This document shows positions 11,377 to 43,781 of a stretch of DNA of 64,000 bases, in pieces. Each line of letters opens with the position of its first letter. Position 1 is the stretch's first letter. The position numbers and the translations under genes are program-made. The stretch lies in the IMG/VR virus record IMGVR_UViG_3300025770_000870, positions 62,001 to 126,000 of that record. The stretch is one strand, 5' to 3'. The notes beneath the pieces were generated by a model that did not search any database, was not told where the DNA came from, and saw nothing but the letters and a program-made list of their open reading frames with translations.

Positions 11377-11414
11377 TGCTCTATATATTAATAACGAATT
11401 AGTATATTTGTTAT

Positions 11415-34477: not shown

Positions 34478-34485
34478 TATATTTG
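34478..34485 (+). promoter_or_regulatory. Bacteroidota sigma70 -7 element TAnnTTTG (representative of ~14 copies seen)
   Basis: TATATTTG/TATCTTTG 4-5 nt before starts at 19277, 23114, 24307, 25061, 34490, 37919 and 43502. Confidence 0.75.
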
Positions 34486-39077: not shown

Positions 39078-40559
39078 TTATTGACAATCATAACAAGGTC
39101 GTTCACCTCTCCCACTACAATCAGAACATTCTATGGTTGAATTACCATCACATTCAGTACAATCTACTTTACCCCTAGCATCACAATCCTCACAATCTAC
39201 ATCATGTTCTTCACCATCAGATCCTTCTTCTGTTATAGTTCCTCCACCATCACAATTTGAACAATTTTCTGTACCATATCCGTCACATTCTGGACAGTCT
39301 CTTTCACCACTACCACCACAATCATAACATTCCACTTCGCCTCCACCACCACATCCCTCACATCTATAATGTGAGCCTTCAGTATCTTCTAATATATAAC
39401 AATTACCACATTCATCTATTGATAGTGTACCATTATCTTTATTCCAATATTTCAAAGTGTCTAAGTAAGGATATTTTTCATATTCACCTGGTTTTATATC
39501 CACGATTATGTTCAAATTTGTATCATCACCATTAGGATCAATACAACTACCATTGGCGTTGGATGCGTTTCCACGTTTTGTATACCAACCATTCTCTTTA
39601 GCATAATCCTTAAATAATTGAACATCAGAATCATTGGCTGTGTATATTCTATCCATAAATCTTTTACCATCTCTCAATTTCCAAAGTAATGCTCTTCCTA
39701 AAATTTTATCTGTATCATCATCTGATTTATAAATAACCAAAGTACAAACTTCTGGATTAGAAATATAGATATCAAAAAATTCCTCATCAACAGCGGACAT
39801 ACAAGAACTACCTAATACGCCCCTCCTTGTCGAGTAATGTGAATAGTGATACCAATATCCTATTTTATCACCAGTAACTTCTTCAAATAGTGAAAATTTA
39901 TCATTAAATTTATCAATTGTTGCTTTATATAAATTAACAAATACTTCAATATCCTTATCAAGGAATTCTATATCATTAGTTTTAAGTAATGCTCTAATAG
40001 CTCTACCTACTTTAACTTCTTGTCTATTCGTTGACCAAATTTTATCCAATCTATCATCAACCTTTCTAATCTTTTCGGCATTTATGACCAATTCTGTACT
40101 TGGGAATTTAACATAAACAAATCTCTTACCCGATTCTTCCGAAACTGTTTCTTTAATAATTTCTCCTAGTTCATCATTTTCTGGTTTTATCAATTCCTCA
40201 CCAGGTGTGAATCCTAAAGCATCGAAAATAGTTTTATTTTTATATTCTCCTCCTTCATTTTTATTAAAAGTTAACCAACCACCATTATTACCAACAAATC
40301 TAACCTTAATATTTTCCTCACTCAGTATTTGTTGTGCTCTTCTATCTGGTATAAATGATACTTTATCATTTTTATCCATTACTATATCAAAATAATTAGA
40401 CCTAACGTCTAAATCTTTATTCTCAACATCTAAAAGTGATTTGGATACTGGGTTCTCTATTTTTGAAAGAGTGAGTCTAAATTTATCAGAATAAACGACA
40501 TCCGACTCCAATATTAACTCTAATGACTCATTTATGAAATCAAAATACTTTTTTAACAT
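39078..40559 (-). CDS. Leader-tagged protein with SCM/FMDRIY domain and 8 CxxC(xGxG) repeats
   Basis: MLKKYFDFINES; GVLGSSCM; ILGRALLW..DGKRFMDRIY; paralog of ORF 28395. Confidence 0.8.
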   Translation of the reverse strand: MLKKYFDFINESLELILESDVVYSDKFRLTLSKIENPVSKSLLDVENKDLDVRSNYFDIVMDKNDKVSFIPDRRAQQILSEENIKVRFVGNNGGWLTFNKNEGGEYKNKTIFDALGFTPGEELIKPENDELGEIIKETVSEESGKRFVYVKFPSTELVINAEKIRKVDDRLDKIWSTNRQEVKVGRAIRALLKTNDIEFLDKDIEVFVNLYKATIDKFNDKFSLFEEVTGDKIGYWYHYSHYSTRRGVLGSSCMSAVDEEFFDIYISNPEVCTLVIYKSDDDTDKILGRALLWKLRDGKRFMDRIYTANDSDVQLFKDYAKENGWYTKRGNASNANGSCIDPNGDDTNLNIIVDIKPGEYEKYPYLDTLKYWNKDNGTLSIDECGNCYILEDTEGSHYRCEGCGGGGEVECYDCGGSGERDCPECDGYGTENCSNCDGGGTITEEGSDGEEHDVDCEDCDARGKVDCTECDGNSTIECSDCSGRGERPCYDCQ

Positions 40560-40597
40560 AATTATATTTCAGTTTTTATATATATTAAATACTATTT

Positions 40598-40879
40598 ATG
40601 AAATATATTAAACCATATAAAATTTTTGAATCAAGATACACTCTTGAGGAATACTTATATGCTGTTTCACAAGAATTTAGTAAGTATAATATCTCTGCGG
40701 TCGGTGTTCGAGAGTTGTTAGATAATTATAAAGTAGCTATCGAAGATGCTATATCAAGTGATGTTGATCCATATACATTTGTAAAAAATATTGCTAATGA
40801 TATGCAATTATCTGATAATGGTGGTTTCATGAGTCATGACACACCGCCTCCGCAACCAACAACGATTAAATATCTATAA
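40598..40879 (+). CDS. Leader-tagged hypothetical protein
   Basis: MKYIKPYKIFES. Confidence 0.75.
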   Translation: MKYIKPYKIFESRYTLEEYLYAVSQEFSKYNISAVGVRELLDNYKVAIEDAISSDVDPYTFVKNIANDMQLSDNGGFMSHDTPPPQPTTIKYL

Positions 40880-40972
40880 TCTATATCTTTTTTCTCATTA
40901 TATAGGAAAACATAAACTTGAGCAGATTATTGAATTGAAAAGTTAATATATACAGAAAGTATTAATTTTATT

Positions 40973-41353
40973 ATGAGAATAAAGAGATTCAATGAAATAG
41001 AAAAATCAGGAGAAATATCTGAAGGTATAGATGCTGATATCTTAGGTATCACAACTAACACTGGTAGAAGAACCGGAACTAGAAGTCCTAATAGAAGAAC
41101 TCAATACTTTTATGATTACTATACTGGTAAGAAAATTAGTGGTAAATCTAAATATGAATTAAACTCTAAAGTTTTTGACTTGGCTAAGAGAGATGATGAA
41201 CTTGGTTTATTAGCTCAATTTTGTTTACAAGTTGAAAGAGATTCAATGACTACTGATTATAGTATTACAGGACAAATGGATAAAGGTGGTTTGTCTGATG
41301 AATTTATACAAAAGATTAAAAATATCAGTGATAATATTGAAGGTGAAGAGTAA
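40973..41353 (+). CDS. Leader-tagged hypothetical protein
   Basis: MRIKRFNE; TAATATATA at 40944-40952. Confidence 0.75.
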   Translation: MRIKRFNEIEKSGEISEGIDADILGITTNTGRRTGTRSPNRRTQYFYDYYTGKKISGKSKYELNSKVFDLAKRDDELGLLAQFCLQVERDSMTTDYSITGQMDKGGLSDEFIQKIKNISDNIEGEE

Positions 41354-41364
41354 ATAAACTTGTT

Positions 41365-41586
41365 TCAATTTAATCTAACTATAACACACCCATAATTTGT
41401 AGGGTGATCAATAACATTAAAATTATAATCATAACAAGTTTCTTTAACGATTTCTTTCATACGATTACTAATACCCGTTATAATTTCAATCTCAATCTCA
41501 TTTTTTTGCATCATTTCCCAAAAGAAGGTATCTAACCTCCTTGACACAAACTCATGTTTAATTCCATGTAAATCTAACTTTTTCAT
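41365..41586 (-). CDS. Stand-alone Smr-domain protein
   Basis: LDLHG, IITG, N.G motifs. Confidence 0.85.
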   Translation of the reverse strand: MKKLDLHGIKHEFVSRRLDTFFWEMMQKNEIEIEIITGISNRMKEIVKETCYDYNFNVIDHPTNYGCVIVRLN

Positions 41587-41603
41587 TTTAATATATATCT
41601 TAT

Positions 41604-41858
41604 ATGAGATATCTGAGAACATACAAAAAGTTTACGGAAAATGCTTACGTAGCAGCATCCACTGCTGGTTCTGGTAGTGTAGTTGCTGCTCAACCTGGAT
41701 CCTTACCTGGTACATTCGGAACAGATGGGTCTGGTGATATTGGGTTTACCTTTAAGAAGGAGAAAAGAAAAAAAGGTGATGTTACCGAGGTTAGTGATTT
41801 GAGAGACCTAGAAGAGGTTGAAATTGAGAAGGTTGATGATATAAAAATCAAAAATTAA
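41604..41858 (+). CDS. Leader-tagged low-complexity protein
   Basis: MRYLRTYKKFTEN; TAATATATA at 41589-41597. Confidence 0.7.
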   Translation: MRYLRTYKKFTENAYVAASTAGSGSVVAAQPGSLPGTFGTDGSGDIGFTFKKEKRKKGDVTEVSDLRDLEEVEIEKVDDIKIKN

Positions 41859-41871
41859 TAAGTTATTTAAA

Positions 41872-42142
41872 ATAAAAAAGAAACTGATTTACATCTGTGT
41901 GATCAGATATAATTTCAGTCTCTTTTCTTACGAGTCCAGAAGTTCACAATTTCATTTACTCTACTACACACCTTTTAATTCAACCGTATCGGTATAGCTA
42001 ATACTAATCTACTGCGGATTAAACAGATAAAGAATCCATAACCTCGGTAAAAGTTATCCCAATTTTCATCACAAGTTACCGCGAGTGATTTATATGAGAG
42101 TGATTAAACACTTTTTTAATTTCGGTATAAATTAAATACCTT
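41872..42142 (-). ncRNA. Candidate ~270-nt structured RNA
   Basis: TATATTTG promoter (42147-42154); at least five hairpins; long terminal hairpin with T-tail; no long ORF. Confidence 0.55.
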
Positions 42143-42155
42143 AATACAAATATAG

Positions 42156-42431
42156 TTATTTTATTTTAATATTTGATCTTTTTTTATTATTATATTTCTG
42201 AGCTTTCTCCTTGATATCGGTCAGAGACATACCAAATATTAATGCGATTATTATTATAACTACTGACAATAAAGCAGTTGATATGATAATCAAAAATGGT
42301 ATCCATAATGGAGATGTTACCCACCACCAAGACCAAGTTGCGACCATACCTACTTCAGCTAATTTTAATCCCAAAAATAGGAGGAAAATTAACACAGGTA
42401 AACTCAAACCACTGTTATTAGATTTTGACAT
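42156..42431 (-). CDS. Membrane protein of the phage WSWWWV.SPLW family
   Basis: LKL.G...WSWWWVTSPLWIP. Confidence 0.8.
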   Translation of the reverse strand: MSKSNNSGLSLPVLIFLLFLGLKLAEVGMVATWSWWWVTSPLWIPFLIIISTALLSVVIIIIALIFGMSLTDIKEKAQKYNNKKRSNIKIK

Positions 42432-42503
42432 ACAATCTTTTTTATTTTATACCTATTTCTTATAATAAGTTTTCTATTTTTTTTTGTGAATATATGAGAT
42501 TGA

Positions 42504-42698
42504 TTATGTAACTGAGACTTTTCTTATTTCAATGTATTCACTTTCATATCCATCATATAAGTCTTTCCTATCCAAAGTCCAACGGCTCACACCCAATTGC
42601 TCATTACCATAATGAGCGTATAATTTTCCGAGGTTAACAAACACCTCTACTCTGTTCGTCAATTTCCAACGAATATAAATTATAGTTTGACTTCTCAT
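42504..42698 (-). CDS. Hypothetical protein
   Basis: 64-aa ORF. Confidence 0.6.
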   Translation of the reverse strand: MRSQTIIYIRWKLTNRVEVFVNLGKLYAHYGNEQLGVSRWTLDRKDLYDGYESEYIEIRKVSVT

Positions 42699-42722
42699 AT
42701 ATATTATAAAAAGAAGAGAGAA

Positions 42723-43502
42723 TTATACTCTCTCTTCCCAAAGTTCACCAATATTAAGTAATCGATGTTGTATACCATACATATTTATAGTAGCACTTCT
42801 GTGGAAGTGACCATAATAGTGGTGTGTGATATCATTACCATTTAATCTCAATAAATGAAACATATCTGTTATTTGATTTCGTTCAAATAACAGATCGGTT
42901 TTTAATTCTGTATCACCAGTATCTCTAATTATACCTTCAACAAAAGGACCAAGTCCAATGCTATTATCAACAGGACAATAATCGGGTGAGTTATGTGTAA
43001 CTACAATATCGATGTCTTTCATGTTAGCTATTTTATCACGATCTAATACGAATACTTCATCTTTCCACCAACTTTGACCTGGGTGTATTGTATAGTCACC
43101 TTTTCTTTGTTTATCAGTTCTTCTCCAATTTCTATCAACACTCACAGCACCACCAACACAAAGTATATTTTTTGTTTCGGTAAATCCTAATGTATCTAAT
43201 TCTAAATTAAGGATGGTGTAGTCTGGAATAAGTTTAATATTACTAAATCCAAATGGGTCATTATCGAAATAAGGTTTGAAGTCATGATTACCACGAATTG
43301 CGTATAACATGATGTTATTCTTCTCAAGAATAGTATTTACATATCCTAATGTTCGGCGCTCTTTCTCAAGAGTAGCAAAACCAACACCAAAGTCACCAAC
43401 TTGAATTATGATAGCATCTTTTATATCATACTGCTTAACATATTGATTAATCAAGTTAAAATTTCCGTGGATATCACCGAGATATAAAATTCTTTTTTTC
43501 AT
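42723..43502 (-). CDS. Calcineurin-like metallophosphoesterase
   Basis: GDIHG, GDFG, RGNHD, VTH, GHFH; start MKKRIL 4 nt after TATATTTG. Confidence 0.92.
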   Translation of the reverse strand: MKKRILYLGDIHGNFNLINQYVKQYDIKDAIIIQVGDFGVGFATLEKERRTLGYVNTILEKNNIMLYAIRGNHDFKPYFDNDPFGFSNIKLIPDYTILNLELDTLGFTETKNILCVGGAVSVDRNWRRTDKQRKGDYTIHPGQSWWKDEVFVLDRDKIANMKDIDIVVTHNSPDYCPVDNSIGLGPFVEGIIRDTGDTELKTDLLFERNQITDMFHLLRLNGNDITHHYYGHFHRSATINMYGIQHRLLNIGELWEERV

Positions 43503-43568
43503 ATTACAAATATAAGTAAAATTTACAGAAGGCAAAAATTATTTATAGTATATCATGATGTTACATGA

Positions 43569-43781
43569 TTAACTTATACTTTTGAACCTTTTTTTACCAC
43601 TCTCTACATTAGAATTCCAATTATCGAGGGGTCTAGCATGGTATGATCCGAAAAGAATTGATTTGTAGATAACTAGCTTATCACCATTCTCGCTATGTGG
43701 GGCCATAAATAAAAATTCATATACACCACCTTTATAATGCCTGTATTTCCCACCAGGCTCGGGATATTTTACTTTTTCCAT
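43569..43781 (-). CDS. DUF1653-family protein
   Basis: YRHYKGG.YE...A.HSE...VIY...ARP. Confidence 0.85.
   Translation of the reverse strand: MEKVKYPEPGGKYRHYKGGVYEFLFMAPHSENGDKLVIYKSILFGSYHARPLDNWNSNVESGKKRFKSIS

What the first reader, a model, noticed from the sequence alone, without database searches (positions are those of the whole stretch)
41872..42154. Unassigned ~270-nt structured RNA with repeated ACCG loops and a potential kissing pair
Seen on the minus strand after a TATATTTG promoter: TTTAATTT-ATACCG-AAATTAAA; ATCAC-TCGCGGTAACTT-GTGAT; ATAACTT-TTACCG-AGGTTAT; GGATT..AATCC; TAT-ACCG-ATA; and a long terminal hairpin with T-tail. TACCGA occurs three times, and loop CGGTAA is complementary to the neighbouring loop TTACCG. 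It lacks RNase P RNA and tmRNA signatures. Inference: a novel phage ncRNA, either a protein sponge or a tertiary-folded RNA.
Basis: partly seen in the sequence, partly recalled or inferred. Interest (0 to 1): 0.6.

Follow-up and report, generated by a model that had tools for sequence, protein, structure and literature searches.

The report
New structured RNA of huge phages
A gap between two genes of a roughly 480-kb marine phage holds a single-copy gene for a 220-275-nt non-coding RNA with seven conserved helices and a covarying loop-loop contact; it matches no known RNA family, it shows up on its own in ocean RNA libraries, and its function is unknown.

Summary
The feature is real. Window 42154-41869 (minus strand) is a stand-alone RNA gene. 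It has a Bacteroidetes-type -7 promoter box (TATATTTG), a 220-nt conserved core and a long hairpin with a U tail.

- **Relatives:** Twelve distinct homologues exist. Two are in 634-kb and 642-kb huge phages (LR745206, LR756502) and ten in marine, freshwater and other environmental metagenome contigs. Similarity starts at the promoter box and ends at the terminator.
- **Structure:** The proposed structure pairs in 97.6% of alignment cells, against 33-42% when partners are slid. 17 pairs show compensatory changes.
- **Redrawn helices:** Only one of the three ACCG motifs sits in a loop, so the sponge idea fails.
- **Known families:** No Rfam family, tRNA or tmRNA matches.
- **Expression:** In three metatranscriptomes from two studies, 100%-identical contigs lie on the RNA gene. 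In two of them nothing else of the 3.1 kb is covered.

Function is not shown. My best inference is a trans-acting RNA that works through its shape, as a scaffold or decoy. A self-assembling RNA is the most novel reading still open.

The parts
42166..42172 (-). Possible upstream promoter element ATATTAA, 11 nt before the -7 box
   Evidence: The same element at the same spacing precedes several TAnnTTTG boxes in the window. It is not conserved in the RNA's distant relatives, so it is tentative.
42147..42154 (-). -7 promoter box TATATTTG (Bacteroidetes consensus TAnnTTTG)
   Evidence: It is kept in the homologues, with two slightly degenerate versions, while the sequence upstream is unrelated. 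The same box lies 4 nt before the ATG of about 7 genes in the genome. The consensus itself is from my own knowledge of Bacteroides and Flavobacterium promoters.
41869..42142 (-). Predicted primary transcript, about 265-274 nt, from predicted start A42142 to the U tail
   Evidence: The start is placed by analogy with the leaderless genes. The end is the hairpin plus U tract. The gene is single-copy in the genome.
41935..42152 (-). Stretch covered by metatranscriptome contigs (strand not given by contigs)
   Evidence: X18 covers 41936-42152, X19 covers 41937-42150, X17 covers 41935-42079. All are 100% identical. Neighbouring genes are uncovered in X18 and X19.
42124..42140 (-). P1 hairpin GGUAU/AUACC
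   Evidence: helix 1: 100% paired, and 4 of 5 pairs change on both sides.
42099..42112 (-). P1a, variable hairpin AGUG/CACU, absent from distant relatives
   Evidence: it is an insertion present only in the window subgroup.
42058..42098 (-). P2 (CUCA/UGGG) enclosing P3 (AUCAC/GUGAU, 42089-42068) with a conserved internal loop
   Evidence: helices 2 and 3: P2 is 100% paired with 2 covarying pairs. P3 is 96% paired, and L060 changes C-G to U-A.
42076..42081 (-). L3 segment CGGUAA, 5' partner of the loop-loop pairing
   Evidence: helix 4: 100% paired. Pair 73-104 is U-A in 9 sequences and C-G in 2, plus L060.
42038..42057 (-). P4 hairpin AUAACUU/AGGUUAU with loop UUACCG (42050-42045), 3' partner of the loop-loop pairing
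   Evidence: helix 5: 100% paired, with one covarying pair (C-G, U-G, U-A).
42016..42037 (-). P5 hairpin GGAUU/AAUCC with conserved loop, followed by the invariant GCAGUAG
   Evidence: helix 6: 100% paired, with 2 covarying pairs. Invariant columns are listed.
41963..41998 (-). P6 helix GCUAUACC/GGUGUAGU enclosing the conserved GAAYUAAAAG
   Evidence: helix 7: 96% paired, with 3 covarying pairs (C-G/U-A in 5 against 5 sequences).
41932..41961 (-). P7 (GAGU/ACUC) with inner P7a (GAA/UUC)
   Evidence: helices 8 and 9: 95% and 85% paired, with covarying pairs. The RNA contigs stop at 41935-41937, just before the 3' strand of P7, so P7 is the least certain helix.
41869..41929 (-). Terminal hairpin (41929-41876) and U tail (41879-41869): intrinsic terminator
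   Evidence: every homologue has its own long hairpin followed by UUUUUAUUUU, although the stem sequences differ.

Best explanation
This is a gene for a stable, trans-acting, tertiary-folded non-coding RNA. It belongs to a clade of huge aquatic phages (about 480-640 kb) whose sequenced relatives are predicted to infect Bacteroidetes.

Shown:
- It is a separate conserved unit. Conservation begins at a host-type -7 promoter box and ends at an intrinsic terminator.
- It is single-copy.
- It folds into seven conserved helices.
- Six bases of loop L3 (CGGUAA) pair with six bases of loop L4 (UUACCG), and this pairing covaries.
- RNA matching it exactly is assembled from ocean metatranscriptomes in which the flanking genes are largely or wholly absent.

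Inferred:
- It acts through its shape, not by base-pairing with a target and not as a leader of a downstream gene.
- Purine-rich unpaired segments are invariant (GAAA, UGAAAAU, GCAGUAG, GAAYUAAAAG). Together with the locked loop-loop contact they suggest a compact body that binds a partner, a phage or host protein or the ribosome, as a scaffold or decoy during infection.

My confidence that it is a real structured, expressed ncRNA is about 0.9. My confidence that it is a partner-binding scaffold or decoy rather than one of the rivals is about 0.4. The figure given below is for the whole statement.
For: - **Homologues:** 12 distinct sequences at 70-93% identity, including the 634-kb and 642-kb phages LR745206 and LR756502.
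- **Sharp borders:** Conservation runs from the TAnnTTTG box to the U tail, with unrelated flanks in distant relatives.
- **Structure:** RNAalifold predicts 45 pairs, 16 of them compensatory. For my structure with the pseudoknot, 97.6% of cells pair against 33-42% for slid partners. 17 pairs change on both sides, and 0 of 500 shuffles reach the observed score.
- **Strand:** Many G-U pairs, a better fold on the minus strand and the direction of promoter and terminator all point to the minus strand.
- **Copy number:** One copy in the own record, in a 483-kb contig and in both large phages.
- **Expression:**. Three RNA runs from two studies hold only about 7% of the 3.1-kb stretch. The 100%-identical contigs of 145-217 nt lie on the RNA gene.
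- **No conserved neighbour:** Distant relatives have different flanking genes, and in most lineages the next gene is convergent.
- **Host link:** The large relatives belong to the Mahaphage clade, predicted to replicate in Bacteroidetes (PMC7162821). The promoter box fits that phylum.
Against: - No partner is identified and no conserved neighbour gene gives a lead.
- The RNA contigs start at 42150-42152, 8-10 nt upstream of the start predicted from the promoter box. They stop at 41935-41937, before the terminator hairpin. The true ends are therefore unsettled, and the RNA may be processed or may partly derive from read-through of the upstream gene.
- Contigs give no strand and no reliable level of expression.
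- The covariation in the loop-loop pairing may rest on only one or two evolutionary events.
- With 12 sequences from about 5-6 lineages, statistical power is limited.
Confidence: 0.55

Rival explanations
1. The RNA assembles with itself. L3 of one molecule pairs with L4 of another, giving dimers, rings or larger RNA-only bodies, as in phi29 pRNA rings and the ROOL and GOLLD cages.
For: The two loops are complementary over 6 bases and covary. Covariation cannot tell pairing within a molecule from pairing between molecules. P4 follows P2 with no linker, so P2/P3 and P4 could stack end to end and point the two loops away from each other. In ROOL and GOLLD, kissing loops first found by covariation turned out to be intermolecular (bioRxiv 10.1101/2024.12.08.627333). 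The RNA appears abundant.
Against: There is no direct evidence. The 6-nt and 5-nt strands of the P2/P3 internal loop could let P3 fold back onto P4 within one molecule. No Rfam match to pRNA, ROOL or GOLLD. No tRNA genes nearby, unlike many ROOL and GOLLD loci.
Confidence: 0.15
2. It is a processed, stable 3' piece of the upstream gene's mRNA (a 3'-UTR-derived RNA), not a primary transcript of its own.
For: The RNA contigs reach 42150-42152, upstream of the predicted start and 4-6 nt after the stop codon of ORF 42156-42431. No terminator lies between that ORF and the RNA.
Against: The upstream gene differs between lineages, while the TAnnTTTG box directly before the RNA is kept in the homologues. 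The upstream ORF is not covered in X18 or X19.
Confidence: 0.1
3. It is a base-pairing regulatory sRNA, or a sponge that titrates a factor through repeated UACCG motifs.
For: TACCGA occurs three times, against about 0.06 expected. There are conserved unpaired segments.
Against: Two of the three motifs are in stems, and the third copy is not conserved. No repeat array. Complements of the unpaired segments occur in the 242-kb record only at the level expected for AT-rich 9-11-mers, with no clustering at gene starts. That is a weak negative, because neither the host nor the rest of the genome was searched.
Confidence: 0.08
4. It is a cis-acting leader (riboswitch-like sensor plus terminator) that controls read-through into downstream genes.
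For: A large conserved fold directly precedes a terminator. In L002 and L022 a same-strand gene follows within a few bases.
Against: In the window subgroup, L001 and the L052/L056/L030 lineage the next gene is convergent. The downstream genes are unrelated between lineages. No Rfam riboswitch matches.
Confidence: 0.07
5. It is not an RNA gene at all, but a short coding region or a DNA-level site.
For: None beyond the fact that contigs do not give the strand.
Against: The longest ORF in the stretch is 32 aa. Substitutions are compensatory in helices with G-U pairs on one strand only. RNA is detected. The standard genetic code fits the window, so no hidden frame is expected.
Confidence: 0.02

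Closest known systems
phi29-family packaging RNA (pRNA, Rfam RF00044)
   Same: A phage-encoded small structured RNA with its own promoter. Two loops are complementary to each other and covary among relatives.
   Different: No match to the Rfam model even at E up to 10. pRNA belongs to small phi29-like phages, and its loops pair between molecules to form a ring on the portal (own knowledge). Here the phages are 480-640 kb, the RNA has seven helices, and whether the pairing is within or between molecules is unknown.
GOLLD and ROOL (large ornate phage and prophage RNAs)
   Same: Orphan, highly structured RNAs of phages with conserved kissing loops. Function is unknown. Those RNAs form RNA-only assemblies.
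   Different: They are far larger (GOLLD often above 800 nt), are often beside tRNA genes and are in Rfam. This RNA is about 220-275 nt, has no tRNA gene within the 64-kb window and has no Rfam match.
IMES RNAs and other abundant orphan RNAs of marine metatranscriptomes
   Same: Structured RNAs known mainly from marine sequence data and conspicuous in RNA libraries (own knowledge).
   Different: Those families are in Rfam and did not match. This one is tied to a defined clade of huge phages.
6S RNA
   Same: An abundant, stable regulatory RNA of about 200 nt that acts by binding a protein (RNA polymerase).
   Different: 6S is one long irregular hairpin with a central bubble (own knowledge). This RNA is multi-branched with a pseudoknot and has no Rfam match.

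Membership tests
Any Rfam 15 family (4227 models, including RNase P, tmRNA, SRP, 6S, pRNA, GOLLD, ROOL, HEARO, riboswitches) | Score at or above the family's gathering threshold | tested here: not met
   No match in the window or in nine homologous loci. With E up to 10 there are only three noise hits (miRNA and snoRNA models, 13-18 bits).
tmRNA / tRNA | tRNA-like acceptor domain, plus a tag reading frame for tmRNA | tested here: not met
   ARAGORN finds no tRNA or tmRNA in the 64-kb window.
phi29-type pRNA | Two mutually complementary loops that covary | tested here: met
   L3 and L4 are 100% paired in all sequences, with U-A replaced by C-G in three.
phi29-type pRNA | Loop pairing is intermolecular and builds a ring on the portal | not testable with these tools
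   This needs native gels, cryo-EM or mutant complementation.
phi29-type pRNA | Sequence and structure match to RF00044 | tested here: not met
   No match.
GOLLD / ROOL | Match to the Rfam model; frequent position beside tRNA genes | tested here: not met
Riboswitch or other cis-regulatory leader | A conserved same-strand gene directly downstream | tested here: not met
   The next gene is convergent in most lineages, and the downstream genes are unrelated.
Independent transcription unit with Bacteroidetes-type promoter | TAnnTTTG -7 box just upstream of the conserved RNA | tested here: met
   Box at 42154-42147, kept in the homologues. The same box lies 4 nt before ATG at several genes. Promoter activity itself was not tested.
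Intrinsic (Rho-independent) terminator | Stable hairpin followed by a U tract | tested here: met
   Hairpins of -17 to -28 kcal/mol followed by UUUUUAUUUU in 10 of the 11 sequences folded; L022 ends in a different U-rich tail. The simple scan missed it because the stem has few G-C pairs.
Repeat-based RNA sponge or type III antitoxin-like RNA | Tandem or multiple equivalent repeat units presenting the same motif | tested here: not met
   No tandem repeats and only short two-copy repeats. Two of the three UACCG motifs are in stems.

The most novel reading that the evidence does not exclude
The covarying L3-L4 pairing is intermolecular, and the RNA self-assembles into a closed dimer, a ring or a larger RNA-only body inside infected cells. 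That would make it a compact (about 220 nt) huge-phage counterpart of pRNA rings and the ROOL and GOLLD cages. It would be a third, unrelated case of quaternary RNA structure in phages.
Probability: 0.15. Interest if true: 0.85.

Novelty: categorically new. Interest (0 to 1): 0.65.

Why it matters
Huge phages carry hundreds of kilobases of unexplained sequence, and almost nothing is known about their non-coding RNAs. This one is conserved across marine, freshwater and other aquatic relatives, and its DNA also occurs in seawater and brine metagenomes. It has a complex fold with a tertiary contact of the kind seen in ribozymes, riboswitches and RNP scaffolds. It appears in ocean RNA libraries in which the neighbouring genes are largely or wholly absent.

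It is short enough to transcribe in vitro and to study by probing or cryo-EM without culturing the phage. A defined partner or assembly state would show a new way in which very large phages handle Bacteroidetes hosts.

"New" here means a new RNA family with no detectable relative. The general category, orphan structured phage RNAs, has precedents.

Tried and rejected
- **Rfam:** Searched at gathering and at permissive thresholds, on the window and on nine homologous loci. Nothing found.
- **ARAGORN:** Nothing found.
- **Another genetic code:** Not indicated. The standard code tiles the window with ORFs.
- **Coding reading:** The longest ORF in the stretch is 32 aa.
Not conserved.
- **Conserved neighbour gene as a clue to function:** None. 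PHROGs and NCBIfam give only generic or no hits for flanking genes in the window and in relatives.
- **Antisense targets in the 242-kb record:** Matches at chance level only.
- **Paralogues:** None. One copy per genome with model R1.
- **Bacterial or archaeal genomes:** 14 pattern hits were all rejected by the model. The best was 21.6 bits, against more than 200 bits for true members.
- **Further IMG/VR relatives by a looser pattern:** 80 listed loci out of at least 118 hits, none matching the model.
- **Further relatives in 50,697 phage records:** Searched with the two most divergent members as queries. Only LR745206 and LR756502 were found.
- **Published catalogue of about 10,000 viral structured-RNA candidates (PMC10690425):** Its models are at most 151 nt and its supplements are not held, so overlap could not be checked.
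- **Extra pseudoknots:** A pairing of the P5 loop CUGUU with downstream AGUAG is possible but invariant, so it is unsupported.
- **ORF 41365-41622 as an Smr-like nuclease (LDLHG motif, from memory):** Not confirmed by PHROGs, NCBIfam or PDB sequence search.

Full report
**1. What is at the coordinates**

The finding lies in a 297-nt gap between two convergent ORFs. One is 42156-42431 (minus strand, 91 aa), a Trp-rich membrane-type protein matching phrog_1374. The other is 41604-41858 (plus strand, 84 aa).

The minus strand folds to -63.5 kcal/mol, with z = -2.9 against dinucleotide shuffles; none of 200 shuffles does as well. The plus strand gives z = -1.7. The standard genetic code fits the window, and the longest ORF inside the stretch is 32 aa.

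**2. Where the window comes from**

The window is part of a 241,918-bp viral record. The same RNA region occurs letter for letter in a 483-kb IMG/VR contig rated 98% complete and in a 492,776-bp metagenome contig. The phage genome is therefore probably close to 490 kb.

The only matches among 50,697 phage records are LR745206 (634,780 bp) and LR756502 (642,428 bp). The 634-kb and 642-kb genomes of Al-Shayeb et al. 2020 belong to the Mahaphage clade and are predicted to replicate in Bacteroidetes (PMC7162821). The DNA of the stretch is held by 16 marine, seawater and brine metagenome runs from at least 13 studies.

**3. Homologues and borders**

One pattern scan of metagenome contigs, filtered by BLAST, gave ten further distinct versions at 72-93% identity. 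They come from marine, freshwater and other environmental contigs. Together with the two large phages this makes 12 distinct relatives.

In the alignment with flanks, similarity begins at the box TA(T/C)ATTTG. It runs through about 220 nt of core and resumes at UUUUUAUUUU after a hairpin whose sequence differs between lineages. The sequence upstream of the box is unrelated in distant relatives.

Flanking genes are kept only among close relatives. In L052/L056/L030, L002, L022 and L060 the neighbours differ, and in most lineages the next gene is convergent. The unit that is conserved is the RNA gene itself. Model R1 finds one copy per genome.

**4. Structure**

RNAalifold on 11 full-length sequences predicts 45 pairs, 16 of them with compensatory changes. 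The results were:

| Measure | Result |
|---|---|
| Cells forming standard pairs | 97.6% |
| Same measure with 3' partners slid 1-3 columns | 33-42% |
| Pairs with changes on both sides | 17 (48 cells) |
| Shuffles reaching the observed covariation score | 0 of 500 |

The helices, in window coordinates, are:

| Helix | Coordinates (5' strand / 3' strand) | Note |
|---|---|---|
| P1 | 42140-42136 / 42128-42124 | GGUAU/AUACC; UCCAU/AUGGA in L022 |
| P1a | 42112-42099 | optional hairpin |
| P2 | 42098-42095 / 42061-42058 | |
| P3 | 42089-42085 / 42072-42068 | |
| P4 | 42057-42051 / 42044-42038 | |
| P5 | 42037-42033 / 42020-42016 | |
| P6 | 41998-41991 / 41971-41963 | |
| P7 | 41961-41958 / 41935-41932 | with inner P7a |
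| Terminal hairpin | 41929-41876 | followed by the U tail |

(Coordinates.) Many G-U pairs fix the strand as minus.

CGGUAA in L3 (42081-42076) and UUACCG in L4 (42050-42045) pair in every sequence. L002, L022 and L060 carry GGCAA with UUGCC. On a tree of the RNA this corresponds to one or two events.

In the window the first one resembles P4 and may be a local alternative fold.

**5. Promoter and ends**

TATATTTG (42154-42147) matches the Bacteroidetes -7 consensus TAnnTTTG (own knowledge). In this genome the same box sits 4 nt before the ATG of about seven genes with long ORFs, often preceded by a TATATATTAA-like element. That arrangement looks like promoters of leaderless mRNAs. By analogy the RNA would start at A42142.

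The metatranscriptome contigs, however, start at 42150-42152 and stop at 41935-41937. Contig ends are not RNA ends. Still, their agreement within 2 nt in two studies is unexplained.

The 3' stop coincides with a site where the window differs from its relatives: G in the window, AA in the others. That could break an assembly graph. The 5' extension may reflect read-through from the upstream gene, a second start site, or processing.

**6. Expression**

Four RNA runs held only 5-7% of the words of a 3.1-kb stretch. When laid, three of them (X17 and X19 from one study, X18 from another) gave 100%-identical contigs on the RNA gene:

| Run | Contig length | Coordinates |
|---|---|---|
| X17 | 145 nt | 41935-42079 |
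| X18 | 217 nt | 41936-42152 |
| X19 | 214 nt | 41937-42150 |

Nothing else of the stretch is covered in X18 and X19. X17 has one other piece, at 42568-42726. DNA carry-over would not single out the RNA gene, so I read this as a transcript much more abundant than the neighbouring mRNAs. Contigs give neither strand nor level.

The fourth run, X20, holds a relative at about 90-95% identity with many flanking genes covered. It has almost no coverage of the RNA gene at the likeness threshold used, which is not informative.

**7. What it is not**

- No Rfam family matches the window or nine homologous loci.
- ARAGORN finds no tRNA or tmRNA.
- There are no tandem repeats.
- No homologue turned up in a scan of one genome per prokaryote species.
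- Complements of its unpaired segments are not enriched in the phage record.

**8. How it most likely works**

- **Shown:** a conserved, single-copy, separately bounded RNA gene; a multi-helix fold with a covarying loop-loop contact; transcripts in nature.
- **Inferred:** it acts in trans through its three-dimensional shape. Invariant purine-rich joining segments and a locked tertiary contact are typical of RNAs that bind a partner or catalyse a reaction. The lack of a conserved downstream gene argues against a leader. The lack of repeats or targets argues against a sponge or an antisense RNA.

I favour a scaffold or decoy that binds a protein or the ribosome, at about 0.4 given that the RNA is real.

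The main rival is self-assembly. P4 follows P2 without a linker, so P2/P3 and P4 may stack end to end with L3 and L4 pointing apart. In that case the covarying pairing would be between molecules. This was found for kissing loops of ROOL and GOLLD that had first been seen by covariation.

**9. Comparison and novelty**

It works somewhat like pRNA, ROOL/GOLLD or 6S in being a phage or regulatory RNA that acts by shape. It is a member of none of them, since the model matches were tested and not met. It is a new RNA family confined, as far as searched, to one clade of huge aquatic phages. I could not check whether part of it is among the unnamed candidates of PMC10690425.

Noticed in passing
window 43514-43507 (-), 34478-34485 (+), 23126-23119 (-), 24319-24312 (-), 25074-25067 (-), 13600-13593 (-), 11403-11410 (+): A TAnnTTTG box lies 4-5 nt before the ATG of several ORFs and is often preceded by TATATATTAA about 10-11 nt upstream. 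This looks like a class of host-type promoters giving leaderless mRNAs. A spacer of 4 nt occurs 7 times in the 242-kb record, against 0-2 for the four control motifs.
   Followed up: partly
window 42568-42726: One metatranscriptome (X17) also holds a 159-nt, 100%-identical contig here. It lies over the small ORF 42504-42698 (-) and next to a terminator-like hairpin at 42739-42711. This may be another abundant short transcript.
   Followed up: no
window 41604-41858 (+); L056:116-1015; L030:1764-2456: The 84-aa protein next to the RNA recurs as a domain of larger proteins (300 and 231 aa, one with a CxxC...CxxC stretch). In the freshwater relatives these lie upstream of the RNA on the same strand. 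There are no family hits, and the protein-atlas neighbours are unnamed viral clusters.
   Followed up: partly
window 41365-41622 (-): An 85-aa ORF with an LDLHG motif reminiscent of Smr nuclease domains (from memory). This was not confirmed: only phrog_3977 (unknown function, E 0.005) and weak similarity to phage collar protein/gp127 chains (E 0.075).
   Followed up: partly
whole window / G000: The record is 241,918 bp and rated 89% complete. The same RNA region is identical in contigs of 483,262 and 492,776 bp, so the record is probably about half of a 490-kb genome.
   Followed up: partly
window 42864-42895: A perfect 13-bp inverted repeat (ATCTGTTATTTGA...TCAAATAACAGAT) lies inside ORF 42723-43535 (metallophosphoesterase-like). 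The terminator scan flagged it on both strands.
   Followed up: no
window 40500-43600, run X20: A marine metatranscriptome holds contigs 90-95% identical to many of the flanking genes, so a related phage was transcriptionally active in that sample.
   Followed up: no
window 41905-41898 and homologues: The loop of the terminal hairpin is semi-conserved (AUCACA, GUCGCA, AGUCGCAA) although the stems differ. The hairpin may therefore be more than a terminator.
   Followed up: no
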